Made by a program: the position numbers and the translations under genes
The notes under the pieces: model-generated
Told to the model about the DNA's origin: nothing
What the model saw: only the letters and a program-made list of their open reading frames with translations
Databases searched by the model: none
From: Mytilus edulis
Taxonomy: Eukaryota
Reading direction: 5' to 3'
Length of the DNA stretch: 64,000 bases
NCBI RefSeq assembly: GCF_963676685.1
Contig: NC_092348.1
Location: 19,840,001-19,904,000 of the forward strand
Shown: piece by piece, positions 9,001 to 51,255 of the stretch
How positions within the stretch are numbered: position 1 is the first letter of the stretch
Layout of the letters: every line of letters begins with the position of its first letter

Positions 9001-12000
9001 TGAAAAGAACTATTATTTGGTTCCTGAGATTGCAAATATATTTAAATTAACTAAGTAAAAGAATTAAGTTAATTTGATGTATACATGAGCAAGTTAACAT
9101 TAACTTTAGATTTTAATGCAGACATCTCACGGTTCTGATGTCACTCTCTTGTTGTAGATGTAAATAGTGATTAACATATAGCTTTCTGTGAAGATAGAAA
9201 TTAGCAAACGTATTGACATCTTTTTAGATATATTTTGAATCAAAATATACATGTTGGGTTTTTCCAAGTCTCATAAATCGAAGAATTTAATTTGAAGGTT
9301 AAAAACAAAAAAAAAAGAGGCAGAAAGATACCAGAGGGACAGTCAAACTCATAGATTAAAAATAAACTGACAACGCCATGACTAAAGAAAAGTAAGACAA
9401 ACAGACAAATAATAGTACACAAGATAAAACATAGAAAGTAAAGACTGAGCAAAACAAACCTCCACAGGTGGCAACATCTGAGGGAAAACCATTAACTTCA
9501 AAAGAAACAATAGTGGGTGGTTCGACATTCTTCTATGAATGCATGGCGCAGACTAACACTAAGTTAAAATGTCATATCCAGCTCAATGAAACATTAAATG
9601 TTAACAAATGTCAAACTTAATCTGTTTCGAAGAAGAAAAAAACATTTCAGAATCTATGTTTTTACCATCTTAGCTAATTGGATAACTGATGCCCATTATA
9701 ATCAATACGTTTTTAGCTAAGCCTAACGTTTAACTAGTTTTATTTCTAACCAGGTGATTCTAGCTTCGCTTTTTTGTAACTGTTATTTGGCATTATCAGA
9801 AGGTCCTTTTGTAAGCTAATTATTAGAAATTTCTTGTATGTGGCATAACATTACGTACAGTAATTTAAAAAAATATATAAAGCGAAATACAAGTCCTGCA
9901 ACTAGAAAACTCAAGTAAATCTTGAAATATCAGAAACAAATGATAACGCTAACATAGCAGCCACATATTCCGTCAACAGTTATACAAAAACCACAGAAAG
10001 ACAATAAAGAATATAAACAATTTATGAAATTCTAAAGTAACTACCGATGAAAACATATTTGAAGATCAAGATATATACTCTTACCGTTAAAATTAAAGTT
10101 TACTTTAAAATCTTTAGATTATTTAAACAAAACCTTTAACGTAACATAGACTATATATAGATAAATCAAACTTTAATGAATACGGGAGATGGCATAACAA
10201 ACATTTTTGAACAACCGAAGAACTGGATATATAAAGAGTTTCTTTTTAAATCCACGTGCATTTTACAAATACAAAATAAACATGCCATTCTTAAAGTCAT
10301 CTAAAACGAGTAACTGATGAAAAATAATGTTTATCCAATTCTTGAACCAATGCATGTACATATCATAAACTAAGTCAACTGTGCACGTTTTTGTCATTTT
10401 GTTACGCATTTATATCGTATAATCGTCAAAATAATTTTCTCTCGGTCTATTATGATGTGAAAATATGGCAGCTAATTGGTTGTCGTGTTTTAAAACCGAT
10501 GTTTACCGATTGTCACCTTATAAAAGCTCTGATTCCTTTCACGGATTTGGCTATACTTTTTGGACCTTTTGGATTATAGCTCTTCATCTTTTATATAAGC
10601 TTTGGATTTCAAATATTTTGGCCACGAGCATCACTGAAGAGACATGTATTGTCGAAATGCGCATCTGGTGCAAGAAAATTAGTACCGTTATTTTTTTTTA
10701 TAAGTAAACCATCAATAAACAATTAAAACAAATCTTTAAAATTTGGACAAATTATATAATTGTCTTGAGAAAAAAAGTATATGTACATAAGTTTAATGAT
10801 AAATAGAAGCCAATTAGTTATAAAAAAAAATATGCATCATTGTTTTAATTTAAATTTTATATGACTTCAATCAAATGAATGAAAACTAATGTCGAGTATA
10901 TGTCAATGAAATAGCAACCCAATGAAACATTGAATACAAAAATCTTTTTGAACCAACCTGAATGAAGTCCAATTCTTATTTTCAAAGTTCTACCCGGCAT
11001 ATGTGGTATATCATACCCGTTGACTTCCTGTCGGATTCTCAAGGCCATTAATGCTATTTCCGGAGCATGATTCCATCCGTTAGGTGTCGGTACACCACTG
11101 GCAACCATGTAAGAATCACCAATCGTTTCCACTTTATAAACATCATACTTATCTATACATTCGTCAAATAAACTGCAATAACAACATATACATGTATTGG
11201 GTAAAATTGAAAAAAATAAAAGAGGAAATTGGTGCAAGTTCTACGTTTACAGTGTTCGTACATGTACATGCGTGTTTTATTTGCAACTGGATTTCAAACA
11301 AACAACAATCAATTAATCATTACGTTAACACTGTTATTATAATGGGTAGGTTACACTCATAGTTGTGTATTTAAACTTTAAGATATCAATCGTTAAAAAG
11401 GGGACCTAAAGAAACCCAAAACATGGACCAAATATCAGAGCACAACTGACAATTTTCTTTTTTTATCGACTGCAACATTCTGGTAATAAACAATACACAC
11501 TTGTGTGAGATTATTTTGAGTTGATGAATAACTGTGGAATTAAATAATCTCATCATAGATACCAGGACTAAATTTTGTATATACGCCAGACATTAATAAG
11601 CTGTTGAAATATGTCAGTCATTTGATCAATTTTGTATAAGCTATAAACTAAAAGTTTGTGAAATGGTGTTGAGCTTTTGATTTTGTCATTAGATAAGAGG
11701 CTTACGTTTTGATTTTTTCTTGGAGATATTATTTAACCTTTTATTCCATTCAGAGTAAAATCATTATTTCTATTACCTATCCAGTTTTATTAATCAGTTT
11801 TTTATAAAGTTTTACTGGATTTCTAAATTTTTGTAGCACGTCATCTTATAAAAGTTAAGAATAAACATACCTGTATAAGTCATTTAGTAGGTTAACAATT
11901 TCAATTGGGCTACTTTCAGCTCCTAGTTGCGTAAAGTCTACAATATCACTAAAGTATATTGTCACTTCATTGAAAAATTCCGCAATAGAAGACGTCCCTG

Positions 12001-13285
12001 TTTTCAAATTTATTACAATTTGTTTTGGTAACATCTGATAAAGTAAAACATCAGTCTTGTTTTTCTCTGTTGCTATCTTGTCGGTCTTTCGTTTAATTTT
12101 CTCAGCAAACTTTAATAAATTTCCTGTCATTTTGGCAACAGAGTACACATACGATGTAAACAAAATAGCGCTAACTGTTACAACAGCTATCAAAGTAGAT
12201 AGAAAGAGATTAAACTCAAACTGGGCAACTATTTGTATAGCTTCTGAAAATGATTGTATATCTGTGTTGATAGCTTGTCGAATTTCGAAAAATATATCAA
12301 TGAATATTGTCATGTTACTAAACCATTCTATACTTTTAGTTTCTCTTTCAGACTGTGACGTAGTGGAACAAATATTTTCATAATCCTTAAACAATTGAAA
12401 TGAATAATATTGATCGGCAAAATATGACAAGTAAGCAGAGTTTTGCATCTTTTCTCTGACTTGTGTTTCAATGATCCCATGATGATGTATTGCTGTGTCT
12501 AAAAACGCCGATGACCGTCCATGTAATGTTATGTAGTATGTCTCTATTTCTGTAGATTGCCATCCACAAGATGTAAAAAATGTCGTCCCAAGAGCTCTTT
12601 GTATCCCTATGTCATCTGTCAATGATAATAGAGCTTCAGTAGCCACCACCATCTGTTGTACTGCTGCATTATCCGATGGAGTAATAGACTGAACTATATA
12701 CTTCAACAAGGCATGAGTAATTGTAGTATAATAGTCTAAATTATAGATGATATTTATAGATCTGTTCTCAACATACCTTCTATGATCAGCTAGCGATGAT
12801 AGCAAATCTTCTACTGTCCAATAAGAATTCCTTACAAAAATACCAGAGTAAGGCCACTTTACGCTGATCAAACTTGTATTCGTTTCTTGTCTCAGTATAT
12901 GAAGCTGGTTTAATATAGCAGATGATACATTTGATGTCCCAATGAAAGATGTAGACATGCCTCGTTCTCGTTGTAGATGCTTTATCAGTTCACTCATTTT
13001 AAAATTGTACTCTATATTCTCTATAGCTATTGATGTACTTTGTCGGATTCTAGATGCTCGATTTAATGAAATTCCAGACAGCATTATTATTGCTGATATA
13101 GGAATGATGATCACAACGAACATTTTCCAGTGGTTACATAAACTTCTGATTTCAGACGCTCTTGCTTCCTCCACTGCATCGCTATCACTTTGCTGGTCAT
13201 TCTCGTTACTTTCACTTTTAACGCAAGATCTAACTTCTATCCCTGACTCCGGAATTATGCTGCCTTTTTTATTGCATTTCATCAT
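6075..13285 (-). CDS. Membrane NIT-domain guanylyl cyclase (TM-NIT-TM-helix-GC), 626 aa
   Basis: Coding exons 13285-11871, 11172-10958, 8930-8832, 7351-7260 and 6134-6075, all GT-AG, total 1881 nt in frame. NIT motifs [12 protein letters not shown] and GIQRALG lie between two hydrophobic helices. Catalytic motifs [40 protein letters not shown] and [10 protein letters not shown]. The GTP-specifying Glu (KVE) and Cys (RYC) are present. An in-frame stop lies upstream of the ATG, and an acceptor at ~13327 implies a 5' UTR exon. Confidence 0.93.
7621..9983 (+). repeat. Near-identical ~510-bp direct duplication (7621-8133 and 9481-9983) in the introns either side of GC exon 3
   Basis: Both copies run from AGGGAAAACCATTAACTTCAAAAG to CCACATATTCCGTCAACAGTTAT, with only a few substitutions and small indels. 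Confidence 0.92.
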
Positions 13286-23672: not shown

Positions 23673-26076
23673 ATGATCATGTTGTTTCACACAATTCTCG
23701 TAAGTTACACCAATATTTATTTAAAACAATAGGAAAAAATCTATATTCAGTGTTAGCACTTTATAAATGATACTATCAAAAATATTCATGTTTTCAAATA
23801 ATATTCGTTTTTCTTAATTCTTTTGCCTTACGCTTCACTTTACTTCATATACAAAGTGTATAAACTTAGTTATTCTAGCACATCTTTTAACTTTTGTTTT
23901 TTTCAATTTTACTCGATTGTTAGGCCTATGCTATCTCTTAAAATCAAAATTTGTAAAATGACAATCTTGTGTAATAAGATGGAACCATGCAATAAAACTA
24001 AAGTATAAAATGTATATATACATGTATATATATTTTTTCAAAGACGTCTTACGAAGTGTGTGTTGCTTTTCGACTAGAAGTGGTACGTAGTTCAAGTTCT
24101 GTTAGTTTTTTTTATCAAAATGTTTTACTGATGTTGTGTTAGTTGTTTACCTTATAAGTTGTTACAGTTCGTATTTTGTTTTAGTTTTTTTTACCAGTAA
24201 ACGTTTACGTATACGTAGGTTGTGTTAGTTTTGCTGTATAAATTTGTTGATGCTGAGGTTGCCGATCCTACAAGAATATGTACACCACCATTACCCGAAG
24301 ACGACGATTATTTTAAGGACTTAGAACAGGGAGATAAAGAAATAAGGTAAATGTCTTTGTAAGATAGGCTAGTGGAAGTTGGCTATTAAATTTGGTGGAG
24401 ACACTTTCAAATGAATATAATGGACTGCACAAGATTTTAATGCAACCAAAAAGCCTCATATTTTTTTCGGATTAACTATATGAATCTATGACAAACCAGA
24501 TTGATGTGAAAACGAATTTATGTTACTTTGATATATAATTATCATAAAGGTTGTATCTTTATCATTATCCTTATATTTATTGTTGAAATTTTATCTTTTA
24601 TTGTTTATATTTTAACTTTCATTGTCATCATTAGTGCTACATTTTTATTATCAAAAACGTGATTTTTGTCTGTAGTGTTTGCGTTTAAATTTTTATTTTG
24701 TATTTGTAGAGCTGAAATAAATAGAAGTTTAGATAGGGAAACAACGCTTAAGGTAGAAACAGATAGAGCTGTCAATGAGTTAATGTTTGAAGCTAATCCA
24801 GTGTAAGTTTTGATACTCTTGTATTGCAGTTAAGTTACCAAGCAAAGAAAAGATTTTAAAAAAATGAATAAAAAGTAAAATCACAAAAATACTGAACTCA
24901 GAGGAAAATCAATACGGAAAGTCGATAATCACATGGCAAAATCAAATAACAAAACGCATCAAAAACGAATAGACAAGAACTGTCATATTGTTGATGCTGA
25001 AGTTGCCGATCCTACAAGAATATGTACACCACCAATACCCGAAGACAACGATTATTTTAAGGACTTAGAACAGGGAGATAAAGAAATAAGGTAAATGTCT
25101 TTGTAAGATAGGCTAGTCGAAGTTGGCTATTAAATAAATGTAATACAATTATCCGTTTCAATATATAAAACAATACATCTAACGGTTACTGTCAAAGTAC
25201 CAGTTTGCTAAATTATTTTACAGGATAAAAAAAAACATGCAAATTGATGAATAAATATGCATTGCTACATAGATATTTTAATCAGGATTCAATTCTTTTT
25301 AATTTACATATTGAAGGAAGGATATCAATTGTTGATTTGTTTTCAGGTTTGTATGGACGGTTGGAATGTGTAAATATAAATACCTGTCTTACGTCCCTTC
25401 CAAACAAGTCTGGTACCAAGGGAAAATGTGTTATGTATTGCATTACTTCTGGTATCAAATCTGGAAATACTTGGATTGTCCGTAAGTACATGTATAACTT
25501 TTAATGTTTTTAGAACCAAAGTTACCTAGTCACGATCATTACATAACAGGGAGATAACTCTTTCAAAATCAACTGAATGTATTAATAACGTTCTATTAAA
25601 TTCTTTTCAATAAACAAAACTAGTGCTTGTCCAAACGTCTCTGTGACAGTGTGTTGTTCACGTTTTTTGAATATTATATGTTGTTGTCAGAAGGTCAAAG
25701 TAAATATTTTGTCAAAATTTAAAGAAAAAGAGCCAGATTAAATTTCGTCAAGGTGTATGGTACCACCTTCATTCTTTCAATAATGTACCATAAGGTCTCC
25801 AGCTATCTGTTTCCCCAATTTTGTCGAATTTATTTTAGTTTGATACTTATTACAATTTTTATGATTACTTTTTTGTTTCATTTCAGTAAGCAACTTTGCA
25901 GTCACGTTCCGTGTAATCAATGGACCCCATACGTGTACAGATGTGTTCCGTCTTGTAAGCGTTCCTTCTATATGTGGATAGCTTGTCCCACTGGTCACCA
26001 TAGTTTCCCGTATAAGTACATCAGAATAGAGAAAAGGTTACCACAATGTTGTGAATGTAAGAGATACAAGTGCTGA
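23673..26076 (+). CDS. Secreted Spaetzle-like cystine-knot protein, type A copy 1 (A1), 190 aa
   Basis: Exons 23673-23699, 24219-24346, 24710-24802, 25347-25481 and 25887-26076, all GT-AG (phases 0,2,2,2). Protein: MIMLFHTILVVLVLLYKFVDA|EVADPTRICTPPLPEDDDYFKDLEQGDKEIRAEINRSLDRETTLKVETDRAVNELMFEANPVFVWTVGMCKYKYLSYVPSKQVWYQGKMCYVLHYFWYQIWKYLDCPKQLCSHVPCNQWTPYVYRCVPSCKRSFYMWIACPTGHHSFPYKYIRIEKRLPQCCECKRYKC*. AATAAA at 26119. Exon lengths are identical in paralog A2. Confidence 0.9.
24988..25135 (+). pseudogene. Intronic partial copy of A1 exon 2 plus its donor site
   Basis: Near-identical to 24243-24391, keeps the GTAAAT donor at 25091 and lacks the acceptor. It follows a repeat fragment (~24860-24987) and is absent from the equivalent intron of A2. 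Confidence 0.9.
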
Positions 26077-27769
26077 AGATGTGAGAGCGAAAACCAGTTT
26101 TCATGAAAAATTAATGAAAATAAAATTTAAACATGTTAAAATCGTCTTATTATTTCTTAATACCTTAAAAAAGGATATATTCCACTATCTTAATATATTG
26201 ATTCGGAATTGTTGTATGACTCCCACTGAAACAACTATCCGTTTAAAGACCTAAGGAAAAGGATCTTAACAAAAACAGGTCACTGTATGCCTTTCAACAG
26301 TGCATCTAGCAAAAATCACATAGTAAAGTAACAAAGGCAGCATAAAAATATATACAGTTACAATAGAGATTATAAAGCGAGCCTGTTTTGTCATCTGTTA
26401 TGATAACAGATAAGTTTTAATTATCGAAGCCACAATCCTCTTTCACTCAATTGTGACATGATGAATTTGGCTTTTGAAGTACAATATTTCGGGTGCTATA
26501 TGTGGAGCATAATCTTCTAACTCTTCGGGAGCACCAATTGAGATAACCAAAATTATTGATGGAGTTCGGCTTGCTAAGCCTTCAGTTGTTTTAGGTTGTG
26601 ACTATTTTTTGGCCATGGCTTGGTCCGTGTGTTTTCAATTTATAAGTTTTGATTTTTTTTTTAATTTTTCTGCTCTTTTTTTCAATGTTGCATACTCTTA
26701 ATCCATAATCGAACTACTAAAATCAGCAAGCAAAATAAAGATGGTCATGCCGATCGTACATGTACTACACATGACGACATATTCAATCAACCAACAATTA
26801 ACCTAGCATTACAAGATGTGCCAAAGTTATCCAAATATTTTAAAAACAATTGCATTGTGAAGACTAACAGCATAATTTACAACAAAATGGTTACGAAAAT
26901 CAACTATGGCTGATATAAAGCCACGACAACCAGTGAACTAAAGGCACCATACTTGTATTTGGCATATAAACGAATGAGTTGGTGTTGAACAGGTTTTGTG
27001 ATCGCTTCACCCTCCTTTAACCTGAGACAAAACAATATCAACACTTCGTCACATTGACATTCGAAACAAGAGGTAAATACATACAAAATACAATCACATA
27101 CAATCATAGTGAAATAAGTAATAAAACAACTTAGAAATGAACTATATTATTAATTACTTTACTATATGATATTTTCGTTAACTTTGAAACGAATAAAGGA
27201 ACATTTTTAAGTACATTTATATTAACCAATGATAGTAGTCCTTTCATTTTTGATGCACTGGGATATTCAATATAGTATTTTAAACAGTGTGGTTACATCA
27301 CAACATAATAAAGAACAAACTTTCAAACTTAATCTAAAAGGGCTTAACTCATCAGATCAATACAAAGAAGAAAAACATCACAAAAAACAAATCGGACGTA
27401 GACGATATTTATACATACCCAACAACAAACAAAACACAAAGTACAGATCTAAAAGTATTCACTATTACTCACACCTAGTTCAAAGCCAATAACAACTTTA
27501 AAAAAACTTGTACAAGTATCAATCAACAAAGTTCAACTACTGATGAATTTATAATAAACACGTCATAAACATTCAGGGCAAAACACGACCTTGTGAAATA
27601 CCAAACTAAATGGTACAAATGTATCGACATATTGTATAGTACCGTTGAAAACAGTTGTATTGGAGTTTTTTTTATATGTATATTCTGAGACTTTTGTGTT
27701 ATAGTAGTCTCAGTTATATTGTAAACGGTGATTCGTTGTAATAGAACCTCCGGCAATTGTTTTTGTTCA

Positions 27770-28012
27770 GGGGCTATGGAAATTTTTTCTGGACACACTT
27801 TTTTTTCGCCTTCGGCAACAATATTTTTCTTTCAATTTTAGCATTATATATAGTGGTAGCTGAGGGTGAAACAAACAATTTTTTTTTCTCAGGGTCAAAA
27901 AACAAATTATTTTTTTTCTCCAAAAACTGGAAACAAACTTTTTTTTCGAAAAAAAAACCTAAAAACCACCTACCCCCCACCCCCCCACCCCCACCCCCCC
28001 CCCCCCCCCCCC
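27770..28012. repeat. Low-complexity MITE-like insert ending in a C-rich tract (27965-28012)
   Basis: T/A runs and a poly-C tract; not present in the right arm of the inverted duplication. Confidence 0.5.
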
Positions 28013-30357
28013 GGCGGATTTTGTACTTAGGAATATGTTTGTAAACGTTGTTTCTTTTAACGTTTGCTTTTTTTAAATAGTAAGCTTAGAAGTTACGAAG
28101 ATATACTCAGTTGTAAGCATACAAGTGCAGAAGGTTGGATTTTTTTTAATTCACCAACAACTAAATGTTTTTGATATTTTACCTTAAAATAGAATGATAA
28201 GATATTTTTAATTAACAATTGGTTCTAGAAATATTTTAAAACGTTGGAAGATACAATAGGTATGTCACATTAGCAGTCATAAACCGAAGAGGAACAAAAA
28301 ATGACCAGTATTTAATAAACAAAAGATAAACAAAAAGACAAACAAAAACTGCACAAAACTTGCCACAAGAAACCTGAGATCACCCCTAGTTTTTGGTGGG
28401 GTTCGTGTTGCTTAGTCTTTAGTTTTATATGATTGTTGTGTCGTCTGTAGTATTATTTGTCTGTTTGTTTTTTTTTTTGTTTGTTTTTGCCATGGCATTG
28501 TATATTTTCAATCTATGAGTTTGACTGTCCCTCTTGTATATTTCGCCCCTCTTTTACAGACTGAGAGGTATTAACCAAACTCAATTCGGAACGTATGGGC
28601 CCCATGCATGGTGATGCTTATAGCAAGTACACTGCCATTAACAAGTTGTGTCTGCCGATAACTCTAATAGAAGAACAGAGGACGGTTTTGTTTGAACGGA
28701 AAATATCTATTGCCATGTCTTGTCCATATGTTTTTATTAAGTTATGATTGCGTTTGTTATAGTTCCTATTCTTTCTACATTCAAAAATTTTAATTATATC
28801 TATAGCATCAGAGTTATAAATATATAATGATACTTCCAATTTACAAAAAAGGATATCTAGCATGTCTGTTAAATCTTTGAAAACATGATTTTAACTTCAT
28901 TATAGAAACAATTTAGTAAACTACCTTAGACCTTAACAATAAAATTCTGATATGAAACACATTCGGAGATCTGAGGAAATAGGAGGTATCAACTGGAATA
29001 AATGGTTAAATTAAGCGACCATTACACACAGAATCTGTATGTTAAGGTGTCTACCCCATTTTGAGGGGCAGGTGGAATATTTCTTCATAAGTATGTAAAG
29101 CTCACAATTGGTAAATTGAAATCATTTTTTTTTAAAGTGTGCATATTATTTTGACAAAGTATGACAAGAACAGATCCTTCTTTTTTCTGTATCTGATTCC
29201 TCTTTAATAACAGAATTCCAATATAGTTAAAGCTCAAATGTCAACTTGGTTTTTTTTCGTATTAATCTTTCAGTACCTGCAAATTCAACAAGTTTTATAT
29301 ATATATTTTTTTATTATTATTATTATTATTGTGTTTTTTCATCACTGAACTATAATTACAATTTAAAAGTCATATTCCTTTCATGTAGATGTCGACCTTC
29401 AAAGTATGTCTTTTGTTGTACAATATTATAGTAATAAATAAGAGGGGGGAGTAAATGACCTGGTCTGATAAGAGCTTCTAACGAATTACCTTGCATAAGA
29501 CAGGATAAAAATGAATAGTCTGCAACCAAAAATATGTACTAAAGCGGAAATAAAATTTCGCGAGGCGATGCCGCGGAAAAAATAAGCACGCGTAGCAACA
29601 GATGAATATAATTGATAATGAGCATAAAAGCCAAAATGTTAATTGATAACTAAATTCAATTCAAACAAAACACTTTTCTTTCAGAAATGCTTGTTTAACA
29701 AGCATGTTTGAAAGAAAAGTGTTCTGTTTGAATATATATAGTTTCAAGGGATGACTCCTAAGTAAAGGGAGCAAGTTATTAATCATCACCAGTCAGTTCG
29801 GCTTTTAGTTTTAAATGAAAGCAAGGAAACTATGAAAGTAACTTTTAAAAGTTAAAGAAGTTATCCCTTAAATTTGCAATATCCCCCTTTCTAAACAGGG
29901 AAAATATAACAAAAGGTCTGGAGTATGGTAGATAAATATTATGCTATAAATTATTTCTACATGTACTAGCTGACATAAACGAAAACAGAAAACTTGATGA
30001 TTGCAGAAAATTAACAATCTGCGACATCACAATCTGTTTACTTATTAAAATTAAGATATTAATAGAGACAAGCGTCACATCGTTCACAGCTTCGTATATA
30101 TTAAATATGTAAAAGGAAAAGTACACCAAGTATAGGATTGATTTTAAAGAGGCGTGTCTAAACGTAGCGAAATTGGTCTGTGAAAATTTTTTCTGATGAT
30201 CTTGTAAAGCCACGTGAAATCACGACTGTTTCCAACACAAGGGGAGTGAGTATCAAGAATACTTATTCAAACGGTATACGCCTACTCAATACGTGGTTGA
30301 GTTTTCTAACAACATAACTAGAAGTTGTTGGATTTTGATGTATTCAAGTTAACAACT

Positions 30358-33004
30358 ATGCATTATATTCTGGTAAGCAATATTTTTCAAGTTACATAGG
30401 AATTCTATGTTTGTATTCCAAAACAAATAAAGAAATTTCGCAAAGATACTGTTTTTGGCTTTTGAAAATTAAGTTAATGTTTCTTGTGACTTATTTCAAT
30501 CTTTATAAAGCTAGATTACTTTCAAAACCCTTACGCTTTTGTTCCGATTTTTAAGAGTGTTGTAATCCTGGTACCTTTGATAACTATTGTGTAATAAAAA
30601 AGGAACAGAAATTACGGAACCTCAATAGCCAATGGACAGTACAACATACCACCCTACTTCCCCGCAAAAAAAATGAAAGCAAAGACAAAAAAAAAAAACA
30701 ACAACACGTAGCATTTCAGTGAACACTTCAAAATTAAACAAGAACTAAAAATAAATAGCGTTTTAAGGGATCGCTTTAAAATCGTACAACAAGCAAGGCA
30801 TATTTTAGCGTCTTTTAAAGTAAATATTTGTTTTGGTGTTTTATTAATGTTGACTGCATTGTTTTAGTTTTTTGTTTGTTTTGCTTAATCTTTTATTTAA
30901 TCTGTTGTTAGAAATTTTTCAAGGAATACACATTGTTTTTAACCTGGTTTTTTTTTTTTACAAAATGTGAAAATCTTTTATTTTCTTTACTAGCTTTTAG
31001 TGTTGGCGGCTTTATCTTGCTATGCACAAGAGGATCAGTGTGATCCAAATGATGGAGACTGTTTTAGAGAGCCGTTTGCTGGTGTCATGACTGGCGAGGA
31101 TGACCATTGTCCGTAAGTATTTCACATCAATGAAAGTCGATTCATATTTTGAAGGGGGAAGGATGATTTTCAAATTAAGTTATCTGAAATTGGAAATGAC
31201 AAATAAAAGCAGCTGGATACAATAAAATACAGAAAACAACTATCGAAAATAGTTGGGCATAAAAGATAAAAACAAAGATTCGTTTTGGTAATATGGCTCG
31301 TTTGATTGGTGTGGTTTTAATATATTAAGTATGCAGTATTTGGAGAATGCATTGTTTTCACTAACAACAATTCGCATGTGATGTATAAATTACACTTTAA
31401 TTGATTAATTATTGTTCCAGGGTTGAAAAAATGCAAGCAACATTAGACAAAGATCCAGAGATAAAAGCTGAAGTCGAGGCTGCGAAATTAGCAATTGCTC
31501 ACTTGACAAAACCTCCTGTTTCTCCGTAAGTAAATTTGAAAACTAAATCAAATCCTAGTACTGTATGTACATGGCAAAATTCGACAGAAGCCGAGGCTCG
31601 AAAAGCTGAATATATATTGAATGTTGTGAACAAATACAAATAATGGCTTGGAAGAGAGAATTAAATTGAAGTTCGTAAATAAGCTCACCAACGTTTGTAT
31701 TTTGTAAATTTAATTCAATTCAATTTAAATTTATAAAAAATTTAAACGAATACATGGGAAATTTTTAGATCAGTAATATGACGTCCTTAATGTGTTTTGA
31801 AATATTCTATATATAACATGTATAATAATTTGTATCACGTTGTTTTCTTGTGAACGTTTTCGATTTCAAATCATCTGTTCTCATTGGCGTGTACATCACG
31901 TCTTCTGATGCTCATATTATTATATTTTTCGAAATATATTATGAGATTTCTAATAAAGCATTCACGAAAATGTATAGATTGTTCCGTCCGTTTGGTAATT
32001 ATAGTGACTGTCTAAGTTGAACTATGTACAGTTAAATAAATACTTCAACTAGTGTCTATGTATCAGCTGGTTAAAACTTCACTAAAATACTTATTTCGTT
32101 TTTAATATAGAGTTGATCTTGGAATTCCATTGTGTTACAAGACATATTCAATATTGAAAGTGCCTCCAAAAATATGGATAAAGAAGGGGTATTGTTATTT
32201 CCATTGGTATTATGTGAAAAGCCAAATAACCTATGTAAACTGTGGACAGTAAGTTATTTATTTTGTTAATGTTATACTATTCTTATTTTGCTGTTCGTAA
32301 TTTTATTGAAGAATCACTATAAAAGTAGGATCAAAATCTCAATGACACGCACTTCAATTTTATAGTATGAGAATTTATTACAATTTACTGATGCGATAGG
32401 AATTGTAGTGGTATATTTCAAGATCGGCTGCCATGCACGTGCATGATGAAATCCTGTCAAATATTAAAAAGAAGCATTCGATCCTTATATTTGCAATTTT
32501 ATACTACAAAAATAAAATTACGAGTTAAATCTGATTTTTTTCTATGCATTGTTGTGACGTTGTCTTGGAAGCATGTGATGCCATGTATGTTGATATTTGT
32601 ATGTACATGTATAATTTAGTAACGTTTCTCAATTCTTAATACGGACTCTTATGAAACATATCATACAGATAATTTTTAATTGTCGTTTTCAAACAACATA
32701 GTCTTTATGCTAGTAAAAAGAGAAAAAGAAGGGACAGGCATATCAGTTTCCCGGTATATCTCCAAATTAACCATATTATGTTCATCTATTTTTCAGCAAA
32801 CAACGCTGCAGCAATTTGCCATGTTCTATGCTGTGGTCCCCATCTTTCTGTTATCCTGCCAACTTCTTGTCACTGAAACTATACATGTTTTGTCCACATC
32901 TAAAACCGAAATACTGGTATCCATACTACGTCCGCCTTCCTCAGTGTTGTGAATGTAGGAGAACCTATTGTTGGTGGCTGCAAGCGCCCCAGAGTCCCAA
33001 ATGA
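30358..33004 (+). CDS. Secreted Spaetzle-like cystine-knot protein, type B copy 1 (B1), 194 aa
   Basis: Exons 30358-30372, 30994-31112, 31421-31525, 32111-32248 and 32797-33004, all GT-AG (phases 0,2,2,2, as in A). Protein: MHYILLLVLAALSCYA|QEDQCDPNDGDCFREPFAGVMTGEDDHCPVEKMQATLDKDPEIKAEVEAAKLAIAHLTKPPVSPVDLGIPLCYKTYSILKVPPKIWIKKGYCYFHWYYVKSQITYVNCGHKQRCSNLPCSMLWSPSFCYPANFLSLKLYMFCPHLKPKYWYPYYVRLPQCCECRRTYCWWLQAPQSPK*. AATAAA at 33034. Confidence 0.9.
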
Positions 33005-36698: not shown

Positions 36699-36876
36699 CA
36701 AACAACGCTGCAGCAATTTGCCATGTTCTATGCTGTGGTCCCCATCTATCTGTTATCCTGCCAACTTCTTGTCACTGAAACTATACATGTTTTGTCCACA
36801 TCTTAAACCGAAATACTGGTATCCATACTACGTCCGCCTTCCGCAGTGTTGTGAATGTAGGAGAACCTATTCTTAG
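36699..36876 (+). pseudogene. Orphan type-B last exon (B'), no upstream exons
   Basis: AG acceptor at 36697-8; KQRCSNLPCSMLWSPSICYPANFLSLKLYMFCPHLKPKYWYPYYVRLPQCCECRRTYS*. The last Cys is lost and the stop is premature relative to B1 and B2. Confidence 0.85.
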
Positions 36877-39224
36877 TGGCTAAAAGCACCGTAGAGTCCC
36901 AGAGGACCATTTATTCCGTAAGAAAGAATAGTTCTAATAAAAGTGATCGTCTCTTGAAATTTGTTTGTTTGTTTGATTAGCCAACTCTTAAGTTATTTGT
37001 TGTCTACAATCATCGGTTTATTCTTAGTTTAATGGTATAGCAACAACATATTTCATACAGAATTAAAGATAATTAAGCGTGGAATAGCGAATCATTTTGC
37101 AGCGATGCAAATATAGTTTCAAATCAAGGATGTCATCAAATATTAATAAACTTTTTTTTATAACTCTGCTATTAATAAATACATTGGTTATTGCATGAAT
37201 AGTGATGACAAATACATGTATCCTTGAAGTTCGTAGAATACATGATATACAGCTCTGGAAATATAAAACAATACTCGGGCCAATACTCAGCAATTCATGC
37301 AATGTTAACCCTTTTGTGATCATATACAATACAAAAGGAGGAAAGTTTGTAATTGCATGGAATCTCTCAAAAAGTCAACATTAATAATACATTATATTAG
37401 TGTTTATATATTGGAACACAAGCATTTTTCACCGATTTCATTGGGTTATACACATGTTTCTGTAATAACAATTATCCGGAATAATTTAGGAATGAAACGT
37501 TTGACAGGCAAATATAAAATTTGCTAGTTACAGGAAGATTACATCAGATAAAAAAGATTTAAAAAAAAACTAGATTCGGACGGCTTATCGTTCACTCTGT
37601 GATCCCGGTTCGTCATTGGTTTCTCTAAATCGTTTTTTATTTGGTTATTTGTGCCGTTAAATTGAATTATAAATGATTTTGACCCTAAGCTTTTCTTAAT
37701 AATTACATCCTTTTGACCTATTTCTTTTATATAGCTTGATAAACTTTGGGTTTTTAATGTCAATAAGGTCAAGGTCACAGCAGCTATTGGAAGACTTAAA
37801 TGTTTGGCAATTTTTGTAATTTCAAGATGTAAAAATTTGCTTCCCCAGTGATATCATTTGGAGAATACATGTATGTCCAAACTTCATCAAACCTAGCTGA
37901 AGGATGCTCTTGAAAAGATCAATATATTAAAGGTCAAAGTAACAGGACCTTTAAATATACCAAAACTTTTGGTCAAGTCTTTCAGCTATATTCAGTTTTA
38001 AACCCTTTCTCTGGTAGGTTCCGGATCTTGTGGTGAAAACGAGATTAATTTATCATAGGTCAAATGTCAGGGCTACAACAGTAGTTCATTGCGAACAGAA
38101 TAAGCTACGTACAAAAATGTATTTCTAATACAAATCAACAAAGATCATATACCTCTCATGCTATAAAATATCTAAGGATTTATCCATTTTTGCATGTTTG
38201 TAATATATATAAAAAAGTGCATCAAATATCTGACAGGGCAAACGCACATTTAGAACATTATCAGTTTTACCGTTTCGTCATTTAAGGGTCAATAAAAAAT
38301 CATAGATTGCGTTGAGTAGTAGATAGACTTATGAAACTTTGTTCTAACGCTGACTATTGCGAGTGATAGAAATTGTACATATAAGGATGTTGTTATATAA
38401 TAGGAATACAGAGGTTGAACCGTGAGATCATAATAAACAATGAAAGGGTTTGGTTTGTACATTATATCAATAAATAGATGATACTATAGACATCTTTCGT
38501 TTGGTATAAATAAATGATGCCAGGTATGAGACACACCAACTATTTACTATCATTCGATGCTGCTTCGCTACCTTAAAGATCATAGCCGCATAAGCTCTTG
38601 TTAAATATTTATCAATAATATTTACATCGCAGTTTTTTTTCCTTCAGAGGTCTTCTGTAAAAAGGTAATATTTGAGTCCAATGGTTCTTAGACGTTATGA
38701 CAACTAACTGCTTTTATCAAATCATCTTACAGGTTATAAACATTCTGGATCTGACAACGAGCACTTTATACAACTCCTGGATTTTGTAGGAGTTCTTGTA
38801 TCTAATTGTTTAGTTTGCATGTTTTGTCTGTGTGTGAACTATTGTTCTTTTCGTCCTTTTTCGTTAGCATCGGCCTTTTTTTGTCATGTCGTTGTCAGTT
38901 TGTTTCTGGTTTGTGAGTTGACTGTTTAAAATTTTGGACCAAATACTCAATAATCAATGAACAAATAATATCAAGCCTATGACTCTATTTATAAAGAGTG
39001 TCTGTTTTCTTTTCTTTTTGCATTTAAATTGTTTTATTTGTACCTGTGGACGACAGACGTGTACCTCTAACAGACTTTATTAACCTTGAGCAATACCAGT
39101 TTCTGTTAGGTATCGTGTTACTCAATCTTTAGTGTTTGAAGTATTGCTTTGTTTTGTTATTTCTTTCATATATATGCATTTTGTTCCCATTATGTTGTTT
39201 GTCTTTATGATTCAACAAATGGTC

Positions 39225-40851: not shown

Positions 40852-43622
40852 CTATGGCGCTTGCAGCCACCAACAATAGGTTCTCCTACATTCACAACAC
40901 TGAGGAAGGCGGACGTAGTAAGGATACCAGTATTTTGGTTTAAGATGTGGACAAAACATGTATAGTTTCAGTGACAAGAAGTTGGCAGGATAACAGAAAG
41001 ATGGGGACCACAGCATAGAACATGGCAAATTGCTGCAGCGTTGTTTGCTGAAAAATAGATGAATATAATATGGTTAATTTGGAGATATACCGGGAAACTG
41101 ATATGACTGTCCCTTCTTTTTCTCTTTTTACTAGCATAAAGACTATGATGTTTAAAATGACAATTAAAAAAGATCTGTATCATATGTTTCATAAGAATCC
41201 GTATTAGGAATTGCGAGACGTTACTAAATTATATATGTACATACAAATATCAACATACATGGCATCACGTGCTTGCAAAGACAACGTCACAACAATGCAT
41301 AGAAAAAGTCAGATTGAACTCGTAATTTTATTTTTGTAGTACAAAACTGCAATTTTGTATAAGGATCGAATGCTTCTTTATTATTTTTGACAGATTTTCA
41401 TTGTGCACGTGTTTGGCAGCCGATCTTGAAATATAACAATATCATTCCTATCGCATCAGTAAATTGTAATAAATTCGCATGGAAACACAACACTATAAAA
41501 CGGAAGTGCGTGTCATGTCAATAAAATTACGAACAGCAAAATTAGATTAACATTAACAAAATAAATAACTTACTGTCCACAGTTTACATAGGTTATTTGG
41601 CTTTTCACATAATACCAATGAAAATAACAATACCCCTTCTTTATCCATATTTTTGGAGGCACTTTTAATATTGAATATTTCTTGTAACACAATGGACTTC
41701 CAAGTTCAACTCTATATTAAAAAAGAAATAAGTATTTTAGTGAAATTTTTACCTGCTGATACACAGACACTAGTTGAAGTATTTATTTATCTGTACATAG
41801 TTCAACTTAGACAGTCACTATAATTAAAAATCGGACGGAACAATCTATACATTTTCGTGAATACTTTACTTGTGATTTTGGTGAAATTTGCACACAAAAC
41901 TAAATAAAATTTCTGGGTTATTTTCATCCGTTAAGTTCGTTGTTCACCTTTTCCCACTAAATCACCGATAAATACACACACTAGTAACTATCAATCCATG
42001 TATGTATGATGTAGACATTATACGTACTTTAAGTAGTGTTGAATTGTTTCCTTAGAACTCTCATAATGTATTTCTAAACATATCTTAATAATATGAGCAC
42101 CAGACGACGTGATGTGCACGCCAATGAGACGACATCTAAACAGATGATTTGAAATCAAAACATACACAAGAAAACAACGTTATACAAATTATTATATATG
42201 GAATATTTTAAAACATACTATCAAGGGCGCCATATTACTGATTTACAAATTTCCGATGTATTTGATTTTATTTATTATAAGTTTTAAATTGAATTGAATT
42301 GAAATTGAAAAATACAAACGTTGGTAAGCTTATATACGAACTTGAATTAAATTCTCTCTACCAAGCCATTATTTGTATTTGTTTACAACATTTAATATAT
42401 ATTCAGCTTCTCGAGCTTCGCCTCCTGCCGATTTTTGCCATGTACATGCAGTACTTGGATATAATTTAGTTTTCAAATTCACTTACGGAGAAACAGGAGG
42501 TTTTGTCAGGTGAGCAATCGCTAGTTTCGCAGCCTCGACTTCAGCCTTTATCTCTGGGTCTTTGTCTAATGTTGCTTGCATTTTTTCAACCCTGGAATAA
42601 TTAACGAAGTAAAGTGTTATTTATACATCACATGCGTATTGTTGTTTAGTGAAAAAAATGCATTCTGTAAATATTGTATACTGAATATCATAAAACCACA
42701 CCAATCAAACGAGCAAAATTACTACAACGAATTTGTCTTTTCATCTTTTAATGCCCAACTATTTTCGATAGTTGTTTTCTGTATTTATTATCCAGCTGCT
42801 TTTATTTGTCATTTGCAATTCAGATAATTTAATTTGAAAATCCTCCTTCTCCCTTCAAAATATGAACTGATGTGAAATACTTACGGACAATGGTCATCCT
42901 CGCCAGTCATGACACCAGCAAACGGCTCTCTAAAACAATCTCCATCATTTGGGTCACACTGGTCATCTTGTGCATAGCAAGATGAAGCCGCTAACACTAA
43001 AAGCTAGTAAAGAAAATAAAAGATTTTCACATTTTGTAAAAAAAAAACTTTAAAAAAAAACAAAGAGTATTCATTAAAAATTGTCTAACAACAGCTTAAA
43101 TAAAAGGTTCAGCAAAACAAACAAAAATCTAAAACAAAGCAGTCAACATTAATAAAACACAAAAACAAATATTCTCTTTAAAAGACGCTAAAATATGCGT
43201 TGCTTGTTGTACGATTTTAAAGTGATCCTTAAAATGCTTTTTATTGTAAAAAATGTTCTTGTTTAATCTTGAAATGTTCACTGAAATGCCACGTGTTGTT
43301 TTTGTTTTGGGGGTATTTTTTTTGTGTTTTTTTTTGTCGGGGAAGTAGGGTGGTATGTTGTATTGTCAATTAGTATATTGGGGTTCCGTAATTCCTGTTA
43401 CCCTTTTTCATTGCACAAGACTCTTAAAATCGAAACAAAAAACCTGCAAGTTGTCAAAGTTTTCTAGCTATATAAAGATCGCAATAAATAACAAAGCACA
43501 TTATTTCTTAATTTTCAAAAGCCAAAAACAGTATCTTTGCGATGTTTCTTTATTTGTTTTGGAATACAAACATAGAAATCATATGTAACTTGAAAAATAT
43601 TGCTTACCAGAATATAATGCAT
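40852..43622 (-). CDS. Secreted Spaetzle-like cystine-knot protein, type B copy 2 (B2), 190 aa
   Basis: Exons 43622-43608, 43003-42885, 42591-42487, 41711-41574 and 41047-40852; exons 1-4 have the same lengths as in B1 and all introns are GT-AG. Ends ...RLPQCCECRRTYCWWLQAP* (TAG). About 5 aa substitutions versus B1. Confidence 0.9.
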
Positions 43623-48800: not shown

Positions 48801-51255
48801 TCAGCACTTGTATCTTTTACATTCACAACATTGTGGTAACCTTTTCTCTATTCTGATGTACTTATACGGGAATCTACGGTCACCAGTTGGACAAGCTATC
48901 CACATATAAAAGGAGCGTTTACAAGATGGAACACATCGGTACACGTATGGGGTCCATTGATTACACGGAACGTTACTGCAACTTTGCTTACTGAAATGAA
49001 ACAAAAAGGTAATCATAAAAATTGCTCAGTATCATGTTAAAATGAATTCGAAAAAATGGGGGAAACAGATAGCTGGAGACCTAATGGGACATTATTGAAA
49101 GAATGAAGGTGGTACCATACACCTAGACTAAAATTAATTTGGTTGGTTTAAATTTCATCAATTTTGACAAAATATTTATTTTGACCCTTTCACAACAACA
49201 TACAATATTCAAAAAACTTGATCAACACATTTTATTGGAAAAATGTCATAGAGAAGTTTTGACAAGCACTAGTTTTAATCATTGAAAAGTTTTTATGCAT
49301 TTCCTTAACAATTAGAACGTGATTAATACGTTCAGTTGATTCTGACAGAGTTATCTCCCTGTTATGTAATGATAGAGACTGGTTATTTTGGTACTAACAA
49401 CATTAAAAGTTACACATGTACTTACGGACAATATACGTGTCTCCAGATTTGATACCAGAAGTAATGCAAGACATAACAACCATTCCCTTGGTACACGACT
49501 TTTTTGGAAGGTGCATAAGATCGGTATTTATATCTACACATTCCAACCGTCGATACAAACCTGAAAACAAATCAACAATTGATATCATCCATCAATATGT
49601 AAATAAAAAAAATAGAATCCTGATTAAAAATATCTAAAAAAGCAATCAACATTTATTCATCAATTTGCATGATAATTTTTTTTTATCCTGTAGAAATAAT
49701 TTAGCTAACTGGTACTTTGACAGTAACAGTTAACTGTATTGTTTTAAATATTGAATCGGATAATTTTATTACATTTATTAATTTTTTAACATTTGTCTTT
49801 ACTTAGTTAGTAACTTTTTAAACTGCAGTACAAGAGTATAAAAACTTACACTGGGTTAGCGTCAAACATTAACTCATTGACAGCTTTATCTGTTTCGACC
49901 TTAAGCATTGTGTCCCTATCTAAACCTTTCACTATTGCAGCTCTGAAAATACAAAAAAAAATGTATTTTGACACAAACACTACAGACAAACTTGATGTTT
50001 TTATAACAAAAATATAACACTAATGATGACAATGAAAGATGGAATATAAACAATAAAAGATCAAGTTTCAACAATAATCAGAAGGATAAGGATAAAGATG
50101 ATCTACAACCTTTATGATAATCATATTACAAATTAAAGTAATATAAATAAGTTTTCACATCAATCTGAGTTGTCAAAGATTCAACTATTTAATCAGAACA
50201 AACATAAGGCACATTTGGCCGCTTTAAAATCTTCTCGCTCTCCCTTGCCACCATTTGCTAGTATTGTCTTGAGAAATGATGACAGTACATCAGAATGGGG
50301 ACGTTAAATGGCTGAACCGTGTTATGAGAGAGCCATATCTCTTGCACGTAAAATACATCCTTGTAGATTTCGAAAAAGAGCAGGCTAATGCCGCTACAAG
50401 GCAGCACTCGCACTTGCAAAGTGGAAAGGGATTAAAATAAGATGCAAAATCTTGTTTCCCAATTCACTATTAATAAATAAACTAAACGTCAAATTTAACA
50501 GCCAAATTCCAATAGACTTTATATTATAAATTTATTTACCTTATGTTTTCATCTTTCTGCTCCAAGTCCCCAAAATAATCATCATCCTCAGGTGCTGGTG
50601 GTACACATATTCTTGTAGGGACGGAAACTTCAGCATCAACAGATTTATACAGGACAACTAACACAACCTACATAAAACTTTTTAATGAAAAACTAACACA
50701 AATTACGTAAAACATCTTTGTAAAAGACTAACATTCCATAAGTAAAAATTCAATGGCCAAAAATAAACAAGACCTTTGCAAAAATTCTATGGTCAAAAAC
50801 TAACACAACCTAGGTAACACTTCTAGTTGAAAACCAACACGAACTTCGTAAAAAATCTTTATAAATAAAAATACATTTGATACTATATAGTTACATTGCA
50901 TGGTTCCAACCTTGATACACAAGATTCGCATTCTGACAAATTATCTTTTTAAGAGATGGCATAGGCCAAAAATATAGTAAAATTGGAAATACACGAGTAA
51001 AATGCTTTGCTAGAATAAATGTATACATACTTGTAGTGTATATAACGCTTTGGTATTTAGATGACAAGCACACATCGCTTACAGTAAAATAAAGCGCATG
51101 GAAACGAATTGAGAAACACGCATATAGTTTTTTTTTAAATATGAGCATTTTTGATAGCATCTATAAAATGCAAACACTGTATATATTTATTTTTCGTATT
51201 GTTTTACATAAATATTGATGTAACTTACGATAATTTTGTGAAACAACATGATCAT
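48801..51255 (-). CDS. Secreted Spaetzle-like cystine-knot protein, type A copy 2 (A2), 190 aa
   Basis: Exons 51255-51229, 50667-50540, 49942-49850, 49560-49426 and 48990-48801, all GT-AG. Protein: MIMLFHKIIVVLVVLYKSVDA|EVSVPTRICVPPAPEDDDYFGDLEQKDENIRAAIVKGLDRDTMLKVETDKAVNELMFDANPVFVSTVGMCRYKYRSYAPSKKVVYQGNGCYVLHYFWYQIWRHVYCPKQSCSNVPCNQWTPYVYRCVPSCKRSFYMWIACPTGDRRFPYKYIRIEKRLPQCCECKRYKC*. Confidence 0.9.
50240..50488 (+). mobile_element. 5'-truncated SINE copy in A2 intron 2
   Basis: Reverse complement of the body and tail of 45737-46094; absent from A1 intron 2. Confidence 0.75.

What the first reader, a model, noticed from the sequence alone, without database searches (positions are those of the whole stretch)
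24219..33004. Acidic pro-region plus basic Tyr/Trp-rich knot: a possible protease-triggered material-forming or antimicrobial protein
Seen (manual counts): the A1 C-terminal 107 aa have 14 Tyr, 6 Trp, 12 Cys and 16 K/R versus 3 D/E, while its pro-region has 17 D/E versus 8 K/R. The B1 knot region has 14 Tyr, 6 Trp, 11 Cys and 15 K/R versus 2 D/E. KY/YK/WY/YY pairs are frequent. Knowledge: Tyr/Lys-rich basic chemistry characterises DOPA-bearing mussel adhesive proteins; anionic pro-pieces neutralise cationic antimicrobial peptides; horseshoe-crab coagulogen is a Spaetzle-fold protein that polymerises after proteolysis. Inference: A/B may be a cytokine fold co-opted for byssus, adhesive or clot material, or a cationic defence effector, rather than a classical Toll ligand.
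Basis: partly seen in the sequence, partly recalled or inferred. Interest (0 to 1): 0.78.

Follow-up and report, generated by a model that had tools for sequence, protein, structure and literature searches.

The report
Aromatic-rich mussel cystine-knot secreted proteins
Two real, expressed mussel genes encode secreted proteins with an acidic front half and a basic, tyrosine/tryptophan/cysteine-rich back half that is predicted to fold like the Spaetzle/IL-17/nerve-growth-factor signalling proteins; the idea that they serve as glue, clot or antimicrobial material is not supported but not excluded.

Summary
The KY/YK/WY/YY pairs are no more frequent than composition predicts. A1 and B1 are intact five-exon genes in an inverted A1>B1>[B fragment]<B2<A2 duplication. 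B1 is spliced and polyadenylated in RNA contigs. The family occurs only in Mytilus species plus two unnamed metagenome fragments, is annotated "uncharacterized", and has no Pfam match and no text hit in the papers searched. An AlphaFold model of A2 (knot pLDDT 66-82) matches cystine-knot cytokines only, best Spaetzle (Z 6.7), IL-17 and NGF. The acidic/basic split and about 20% aromatics hold in the A and C types measured. Several points weigh against DOPA-adhesive or classical AMP readings: half of the Tyr/Trp sites are merely aromatic in paralogues, often as Phe; dN/dS is 0.05-0.6; and no basic cleavage site precedes the knot. Best reading: a lineage-specific secreted cystine-knot ligand, function untested. 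No tissue data were reachable. The scan noted this family before, here and on another chromosome of this genome.

The parts
23673..23699 (+). A1 exon 1: start codon and first 9 residues of the signal peptide (MIMLFHTIL), donor GTAAGT at 23700
   Evidence: Motif search; sequence; same residues as the start of P0008/P0002
24219..24346 (+). A1 exon 2: end of the signal peptide (..YKFVDA) and first acidic block (EVADPTRICTPPLPEDDDYFKDLEQGDKEI)
   Evidence: phase-2 donor read
24710..24802 (+). A1 exon 3: second acidic block (AEINRSLDRETTLKVETDRAVNELMFEANP)
   Evidence: junction phases consistent with P0008
24987..25135 (+). Extra copy of the 3' part of A1 exon 2 plus the start of its intron, lying inside intron 3. 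It has no good acceptor, is absent from A2 and is not part of the model.
   Evidence: tblastn (94% identical peptide); sequence. Its use in RNA was not tested.
25347..25481 (+). A1 exon 4: first half of the basic aromatic knot domain (3 Cys)
25887..26076 (+). A1 exon 5: second half of the knot domain (9 Cys, ends LPQCCECKRYKC, stop TGA)
30358..30372 (+). B1 exon 1: ATG and MHYIL
   Evidence: RNA-contig joint 30371/2 to 30993/4 GT..AG (X5); sequence; identical in B2
30994..31112 (+). B1 exon 2: rest of the signal peptide (LLVLAALSCYAQ) and acidic Cys-containing block
   Evidence: joint 31112 to 31421 in X1, X2 and X5
31421..31525 (+). B1 exon 3: acidic/helical block (VEKMQATLDKDPEIKAEVEAAKLAIAHLTKPPVS)
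   Evidence: joint 31525 to 32111 in X1, X2 and X5; contigs with 0 differences
32111..32248 (+). B1 exon 4: first half of the knot domain
   Evidence: joint 32248 to 32797 GT..AG in X2 and X5
32797..33004 (+). B1 exon 5 coding part: second half of the knot domain (LPQCCECRRTYCWWLQAPQSPK, stop). The 3' UTR runs to about 33058, where a poly(A) loose end begins.
36700..36903 (+). Lone B-type last-exon fragment with internal stops (outside the finding)
40852..43622 (-). B2, inverted paralogue of B1 (five exons; 3-4 residues shorter at the C-terminus)
48801..51255 (-). A2, inverted paralogue of A1. Its exon translations equal P0008 = XP_071173073.1, 'uncharacterized protein [Mytilus edulis]'.

Best explanation
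A1 and B1 are members of a Mytilus-restricted multigene family of secreted proteins of about 190 aa. Each has a signal peptide, an acidic and probably flexible or helical N-terminal region of about 65-75 aa, and a disulfide-rich, strongly basic, aromatic-rich C-terminal domain of about 105 aa. That domain adopts the cystine-knot cytokine fold closest to Spaetzle, IL-17 and neurotrophins.

Most likely mechanism (inferred). The knot domain is an extracellular ligand that dimerises through its aromatic beta-sheet faces, as homodimers or as A:B pairs. The acidic N-terminal region shields the basic domain during secretion and may be displaced or trimmed outside the cell. The basic, aromatic surface then binds a receptor or an anionic partner.

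Shown here: gene structure, expression and splicing of B1, secretory signal, conserved charge split, conserved cysteine framework, purifying selection and predicted fold. Inferred: dimerisation, any processing, the receptor and the biological role.
For: Gene models. All junctions are phase-consistent. A2 equals RefSeq protein P0008. B1 exons are covered and joined by four GT..AG joints, with a poly(A) end, in contigs of runs X2 and X5 and weakly X1.

Family range. An exhaustive HMMER search of 1.84e9 representatives gave 6 hits at E<=1e-3. Five are family members: three Mytilus and two unnamed metagenome fragments. Word-indexed searches returned only Mytilus edulis, galloprovincialis, californianus, trossulus and coruscus, all 'uncharacterized'. 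The own genome gave 21 last-exon matches on three chromosomes.

Fold. The AlphaFold model built from 26 alignment rows has pLDDT 66-82 over residues 90-190. All 40 Foldseek rows shown are cystine-knot factors, the best being NT-3 (E 0.027, prob 0.99). In VIA-align against 48,161 chains, 18 of the top 20 rows are cystine-knot factors by title: IL-17A Z 6.0, Spaetzle Z 5.8, NGF Z 5.8. In the second look the best match is Spaetzle from the Toll complex, 4bv4_M (Z 6.7, rmsd 2.6, 62 aligned). The ESM-Atlas feature search puts a Spaetzle cluster first (0.90, 195 of 256 features).

Conservation. dN/dS is 0.33 for the A knot and 0.14 for the B knot. The pro region has pI about 4.1 and the knot about 9.5 in the 8 A/C proteins examined.
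Against: There is no sequence-level membership in any cytokine family. None of the 12 family proteins scanned reaches a Pfam cut-off; the only match is a sub-threshold DAN hit (13.4 bits, cut-off 22) in one of them. None of the 8 exon peptides gives a relevant match. hhalign against the mussel's own NGF-like family gives probability 0.06%. Structural Z scores are middling (below 8), Foldseek E-values are all above 0.001, and the N-terminal half is unmodelled. Aromatic content (18-22%) is about twice that of the mussel NGF-like protein (10.4%), which a plain ligand role does not explain. No activating cleavage site is visible. Contig depth of hundreds in X2 and X5, against none in raw RNA run X21, fits an abundant gland or effector product at least as well as a cytokine. 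No receptor, dimer or tissue evidence was obtained.
Confidence: 0.5

Rival explanations
1. Cationic defence effector. The basic Trp/Tyr-rich knot domain acts directly on microbial envelopes, and the anionic N-terminal region neutralises it until release.
For: The charge split is conserved. The family is lineage-restricted and multi-copy, in tandem and inverted arrays, as is usual for Mytilus effector families (PMC10138031, abstract seen). Exon depth is high in X2 and X5, low in X1 and absent in X21.
Against: The domain is about 105 aa with 10-12 Cys and a cytokine fold, much larger than known Mytilus antimicrobial peptides (my knowledge). No dibasic or furin site lies at the junction. The mature part is the most conserved part: A knot exon 5 has pN 0.040 against pS 0.205, and B knot dN/dS is 0.14. 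That is the opposite of the hypervariable mature peptides described for MgCRP-I (PMC4558851, abstract seen).
Confidence: 0.2
2. Structural, adhesive or redox material protein (byssus, plaque, periostracum or clot). A cytokine fold has been co-opted, with Tyr converted to DOPA and cation-pi or thiol chemistry, by analogy with Mfp-6 or coagulogen.
For: The knot composition (about 105 aa, Cys 11%, Tyr 12-13%, pI 9.5) is close to Mfp6-1 (101 aa mature, Cys 11.0%, Tyr about 16.5%, pI 9.04; PMC13208468, passages read). The family is restricted to the byssate genus Mytilus.
Against: Of the 20 Tyr/Trp positions in A1, only 11 of 18 in C, 9 of 17 in B and 8 of 15 in D stay aromatic, and Tyr is often exchanged for Phe. 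C-type proteins carry 7-10 Tyr and 7-8 Phe. There is no low complexity or repeat, and KY-type pairs are at chance level. Mfp6-1 has no pro-region. No foot-protein-named sequence appears among the hits. Coagulogen is not among the rows shown. Motif and accession searches of the paper library found nothing.
Confidence: 0.15
3. Decaying duplicates or annotation noise without function.
For: There is a lone B last-exon fragment with stops at 36700-36903 and a stray exon duplicate in A1. Older gene models fuse A and B (P0001, P0010). No separate B-type protein appears in the databases searched.
Against: All five exons of A1, A2, B1 and B2 are open with canonical splice sites. B1-identical spliced, polyadenylated contigs exist. 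dN/dS is well below 1.
Confidence: 0.05

Closest known systems
Spaetzle (Pfam PF16077; structures 3e07, 4bv4), the arthropod Toll ligand
   Same: Secreted pro-protein with a C-terminal domain of about 100 aa and a cystine-knot fold. It gives the best structural match (4bv4_M Z 6.7, rmsd 2.6, 62 aligned; 3e07 Z 5.8) and the top ESM-Atlas cluster. The C-terminal CC-x-C motif resembles the end of Drosophila Spaetzle as I recall it (not checked by a call).
   Different: No PF16077 match at E<=10 and none at these loci in the six-frame genome search. It has 10-12 Cys instead of 7 (the 7 is recalled). No Arg cleavage site precedes the knot. It has twice the aromatic content. The knot is split by an intron. 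Toll binding is unknown.
Interleukin-17 family (PF06083)
   Same: Structural matches at Z 6.0-6.2 over about 80 residues. IL-17 genes are expanded in marine molluscs (PMC8353272, abstract seen).
   Different: No Pfam match. The family has a full set of 10 conserved Cys, whereas IL-17 has four knot cysteines (recalled). It has an acidic N-terminal region.
Neurotrophins/NGF (PF00243), including the mussel's own NGF-like gene (L001/P0023)
   Same: Basic mature knot domain after a pro-region. Structural Z 5.5-5.8; Foldseek top hit NT-3. hhalign lines up VPC / Y.YRC / CCEC with NGF knot cysteines 3, 4 and 5-x-6.
   Different: hhalign probability 0.06%. No RSKR furin site, which P0023/L001 has. P0023 hits PF00243 at 7e-23 while this family hits nothing.
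DAN/sclerostin cystine-knot antagonists (PF03045)
   Same: These are the only faint sequence signals: sclerostin E 0.43 in the PDB profile search and DAN at 13.4 bits in P0021, both aligning RC.P...CP...C.C. Foldseek gives SOST prob 0.98.
   Different: Below every threshold. No C-x-G-x-C motif.
Mussel foot protein Mfp-6 (M. coruscus Mfp6-1, PMC13208468)
   Same: A basic, Cys- and Tyr-rich mature domain of about 100 aa in the same genus.
   Different: No detectable sequence relation in the searches run. Mfp6-1 has no acidic pro-region and contains a low-complexity region. Tyr is not specifically conserved here.

Membership tests
Spaetzle (PF16077) | Match to the family profile above the curated cut-off (27 bits) | tested here: not met
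   None of the 8 exon peptides and none of the 12 family proteins matches at E<=10. The six-frame search of the own genome finds only L001 on another chromosome (21.3 bits).
Spaetzle (PF16077) | Cystine-knot fold of the C-terminal domain | tested here: met
   Predicted model only: 4bv4_M Z 6.7, rmsd 2.6, 62 aligned; 3e07 Z 5.8. Z is below 8, so this is fold level only.
Spaetzle (PF16077) | Activating cleavage after a basic residue just upstream of the knot | tested here: not met
   The junctions read ..EANPVFVSTVGMC (A) and ..PWIAPPQPAGASMC (C) and ..LTKPPVSPVDLGIPLC (B). No conserved Arg/Lys site is present.
Spaetzle (PF16077) | Binds and activates a Toll receptor | not testable with these tools
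   Needs binding or reporter assays.
NGF/neurotrophin (PF00243) | Profile match, or profile-profile relation to the mussel NGF-like family | tested here: not met
   No Pfam hits, while the control P0023 scores 81 bits. hhalign probability 0.06%, E 0.79.
IL-17 (PF06083) | Profile match | tested here: not met
   Structural similarity only (Z about 6).
Mussel foot protein Mfp-6 | Basic mature protein of about 100 aa with about 11% Cys and 16-20% Tyr | tested here: met
   The knot domain has Cys 11%, Tyr 12-13% and pI 9.5, against Mfp6-1 values from PMC13208468. This is composition only.
Mussel foot protein Mfp-6 | Signal peptide directly followed by the mature protein; sequence similarity to Mfp-6 | tested here: not met
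   An acidic region of about 65-75 aa intervenes. No foot-protein-named hit appears. I did not align an Mfp-6 sequence directly, because no tool gave me one.
Mussel foot protein Mfp-6 | Foot-gland expression, presence in plaque, DOPA modification | not testable with these tools
   Run and sample names are coded. Supplementary proteome tables are closed.
Cationic antimicrobial peptide precursors with an anionic pro-piece | Signal, anionic and cationic parts in one precursor | tested here: met
Cationic antimicrobial peptide precursors with an anionic pro-piece | Recognisable processing site; diversifying mature region | tested here: not met
   No basic site. dN/dS is 0.14-0.33 in the knot, with the last exon the most conserved.
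Coagulogen | Structural match to coagulogen; clotting-enzyme cleavage sites; polymerisation | tested here: inconclusive
   Coagulogen is not among the rows shown, but the lists are capped. Cleavage and polymerisation are not testable here.

The most novel reading that the evidence does not exclude
A Spaetzle/IL-17/NGF-type cystine-knot fold has been turned, within the genus Mytilus, into an abundant basic, aromatic- and cysteine-rich extracellular working protein. This could be a redox or adhesive partner in byssus or periostracum convergent on Mfp-6, or a clot or antimicrobial effector. Its acidic N-terminal half would act as a built-in neutraliser, and the A and B types would work as a pair.
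Probability: 0.2. Interest if true: 0.75.

Novelty: new variant of a known kind. Interest (0 to 1): 0.5.

Why it matters
A passage in PMC7773633 states that no spaetzle homologue had been described outside arthropods except in one clam. Mussels have very large Toll-like and IL-17 receptor repertoires (my knowledge) whose endogenous ligands are unknown. A genus-specific, multi-copy family with this fold is a concrete candidate set for such ligands.

If the family instead proves to be a material or effector protein, it would be a clear case of a cytokine scaffold recruited for extracellular chemistry. The unusual 20% aromatic, pI 9.5 composition is real and unexplained under either reading.

Tried and rejected
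Searches that gave nothing useful:
- Pfam on each exon peptide gave nothing relevant.
- The first AlphaFold run with 12 rows was too poor to use (mean pLDDT 46.5). Its Foldseek list already held only cystine-knot factors, but at E of 0.18 or worse.
- hhalign against the mussel NGF-like alignment was not significant.
- Paper searches for six database accessions or locus names and five peptide motifs returned 0 papers. Two topical searches and one on spaetzle in bivalves returned no paper on this family. That the family is not in print rests on these five searches of the held library only.

Other dead ends and limits:
- I first thought B1's knot exons were out of phase. This was my misreading of the donor site, corrected by the alignment and confirmed by the RNA joint.
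- Raw RNA run X21 (another Mytilus label, about 6% of the run read) showed no reads on B1 exons, so it gave no strand or level information.
A1 expression, and any use of its duplicated exon, are therefore untested.
- A non-canonical in-frame joint, 32246 to 32843 (CA..CA), in X2 and X5 at depths similar to the canonical joint remains unexplained. It could come from a paralogue or allele, an assembly effect or a real isoform.

Full report
WHAT IS THERE. The window is AT-rich animal DNA (GC about 31%). It equals G000:C5:19840001-19904000 of a 1.37-Gb assembly. The exon translations of one gene in it (A2) are identical to P0008 = XP_071173073.1, 'uncharacterized protein [Mytilus edulis]', so the organism is a blue mussel or a very close relative.

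tblastn of the exon peptides against the window and the inverted-repeat scan (12 arm pairs, 81-97% complementary) show an inverted segmental duplication. Its order is A1 (+, 23673-26076), B1 (+, 30358-33004), a lone B last-exon fragment with stops (+, 36700-36903), B2 (-, 43622-40852) and A2 (-, 51255-48801).

GENE MODELS.

A1 has five exons: 23673-23699, 24219-24346, 24710-24802, 25347-25481 and 25887-26076. All have canonical GT/AG sites and consistent phases, read, and they mirror the 190-aa P0008.

B1 has five exons: 30358-30372, 30994-31112, 31421-31525, 32111-32248 and 32797-33004. For B1 there is direct RNA evidence (6000 letters, 4 runs). In Logan contigs of X2 and X5, depth falls almost wholly on the exon-bearing bins (about 250-1300 there, at most 90 in the bins just after exons 2 and 3, and 0 in most intron bins). 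It is weak in X1 (5-28). Joints with GT..AG ends are seen at 31112 to 31421 and 31525 to 32111 (X1, X2, X5), 32248 to 32797 (X2, X5) and 30371/2 to 30993/4 (X5). A poly(A) loose end lies at 33058 (X2). Several contigs match B1 with 0 differences.

These runs are labelled only 'RNA?', but intron-skipping, polyadenylated contigs show that they hold transcripts. Raw RNA run X21 (another species label, about 6% read) had no reads on B1 exons.

THE OBSERVATION. The enrichment of Tyr, Trp and Cys is far beyond generic protein composition (the background frequencies are recalled values). The 'frequent KY/YK/WY/YY pairs' are not beyond what the composition gives: A1 has 9 against 6.5 expected (736 of 5000 shuffles reach 9), and B1 has 7 against 5.9 (1795 of 5000).

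The features are not peculiar to A1 and B1. In the 8 full-length A- and C-type proteins from four or five Mytilus species, the N-terminal region has pI 4.05-4.47. The knot domain has pI 9.2-9.6 with 18-22% aromatic residues. The mussel's own NGF-like mature domain has 10.4% aromatics and pI 6.9.

THE FAMILY. A profile of the four last-exon peptides was run by HMMER against 1.84e9 representative proteins. It found 6 proteins at E<=1e-3. Five are real: two M. edulis models, one M. trossulus protein and two unnamed metagenome fragments. The sixth is an unrelated repeat protein.

Word-indexed searches with an A-type and a C-type protein returned 6 and 3 clusters, all Mytilus and all unnamed. Two older M. 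edulis models (P0001, P0010) are A-B fusions. No separate B-type protein was found, so B1 and B2 appear to be unannotated as genes of their own.

In the own genome the same profile gives 21 last-exon matches. Seven are on C5 (three A, four B including the fragment), twelve on C12 (seven 'C' on one strand, five 'D' on the other, interleaved) and two on C8 ('E'). All carry LPQCC[E/F]C. Ten cysteines are conserved across the A and C types, A has 12 and B has 11.

FOLD AND FAMILY MEMBERSHIP. No Pfam family is matched by the exon peptides or by 12 family proteins at E<=10. The one exception is a sub-threshold DAN hit in one protein (13.4 bits, cut-off 22). The control P0023 (mussel NGF-like) scores 81 bits on PF00243. 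PF16077 searched in six frames over the genome hits only that NGF-like locus (21.3 bits). A PDB profile search gives only sclerostin at E 0.43. hhalign against the NGF-like alignment gives probability 0.06%, although it lines up VPC, Y.YRC and CCEC with NGF knot cysteines 3, 4 and 5-x-6.

At the level of predicted structure the signal is consistent. With 26 alignment rows, the A2 model reaches pLDDT 66-82 over residues 90-190; the N-terminal half stays below 50. All 40 Foldseek rows shown are cystine-knot factors, although none has E<=0.001; the best is NT-3 at E 0.027 with prob 0.99.

VIA-align against 48,161 chains puts cystine-knot factors in 18 of the top 20 rows. The other two rows have uninformative titles, and the first clearly unrelated row is at rank 21 with Z 3.7. 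The leaders are IL-17A (Z 6.0), Spaetzle (Z 5.8) and NGF (Z 5.8). The second look gives Spaetzle from the Toll complex as best (Z 6.7, rmsd 2.6 A, 62 aligned).

The ESM-Atlas feature search independently puts a Spaetzle cluster first (0.90, 195 of 256 features), followed by NGF, IL-17 and Noggin clusters. By the tool's own calibration this is a lead only. I conclude that the domain has a cystine-knot cytokine fold of the Spaetzle/IL-17/NGF class. It cannot be filed as a member of any of those sequence families.

(a) Protease trigger. No basic, dibasic or furin-type site lies in the 12-20 residues before the first knot cysteine in A, B or C. The mussel NGF-like gene, by contrast, has RSKR. Processing is therefore unshown, and the acidic part may be a permanent arm.

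(b) DOPA or adhesive chemistry. Of the 20 Tyr/Trp positions in the A1 knot, 16 stay aromatic in all four A-type proteins. Only 11 of 18 do so in C, 9 of 17 in B and 8 of 15 in D, and Tyr is frequently exchanged for Phe, Trp, His or Leu. C-type proteins hold 7-10 Tyr but 7-8 Phe, with the same total aromatic share. What is conserved is aromatic packing in beta-strands, not tyrosine as such. The sequence has no repeats or low complexity.

Still, the knot's gross composition is close to that reported for Mfp6-1: 101 aa, Cys 11.0%, Tyr about 16.5%, pI 9.04, with no pro-region (PMC13208468, passages read).

(c) Antimicrobial effector. The charge architecture fits. However, the paralogue pairs show purifying selection. 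For A, prepro dN/dS is 0.62 and knot 0.33, and the last exon has pN 0.040 against pS 0.205. For B the values are 0.05 and 0.14. The mature part is the most conserved part, unlike the hypervariable mature peptides of Mytilus CRP-I (PMC4558851, abstract only).

(d) A basic mature knot after a less basic pro-part is also normal for neurotrophins (my knowledge). So the charge split does not by itself argue against a ligand.

VERDICT. The best-supported reading is a lineage-specific secreted cystine-knot ligand family (confidence about 0.5). The effector reading (0.2) and the material reading (0.15) remain open because no tissue, proteome or activity evidence could be reached. Published supplementary proteome and expression tables, which were closed, may already hold the answer.

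The scan had noted this cluster before (s1-841827, s1-842226) and the related paired cassettes on another chromosome (s1-841820, with a follow-up proposing a two-part ligand). My one search agrees with the interleaved two-type arrangement there.

Noticed in passing
window 24987-25135: A1 carries a second, 94% identical copy of the 3' part of exon 2 plus the first bases of its intron, sitting inside intron 3. A2 has no such copy. It has no obvious acceptor. If spliced in, it would add about 34 acidic residues in frame (the flanking exons end and start in phase 2).
   Followed up: partly
window 32246 to 32843: A non-canonical (CA..CA) in-frame joint in RNA contigs of X2 and X5, at depths similar to the canonical 32248 to 32797 joint. 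It would remove 16 residues including two conserved cysteines. It could be a paralogue or allele, an assembly effect or an isoform.
   Followed up: no
window 27701-28700: Repeats with very high contig depth (up to about 42,000 in X1) and many variant joints and loose ends in all four runs. This is probably an expressed transposable element or SINE-like repeat between A1 and B1. It includes a poly-Pro-coding simple stretch near 27960-28030.
   Followed up: no
window 36700-36903: A lone B-type last exon (91% identical peptide) with two stop codons and no upstream exons found. It is a remnant at the centre of the inverted duplication.
   Followed up: partly
window 10857-13285 (- strand): Long open frames (476 aa and 126 aa) that look like a receptor-type guanylate/adenylate cyclase (catalytic-domain-like motifs). 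It is an unrelated neighbour gene and was not scanned against Pfam.
   Followed up: no
G000:C12:16.37-16.62 Mb (loci L009-L015, L017-L021): Seven C-type and five D-type last exons alternate on opposite strands, a repeated two-type cassette like the A/B pairs on C5. The B and D types have 11 knot cysteines (odd), and the A and C types have 12 and 10 (even).
   Followed up: partly
L001 (G000:C10:22368783-22369076): The mussel has a canonical single-exon neurotrophin-like gene (248-aa ORF, RSKR site, PF00243 at 7e-23 in its relative P0023). It also scores weakly on the Spaetzle profile.
   Followed up: partly
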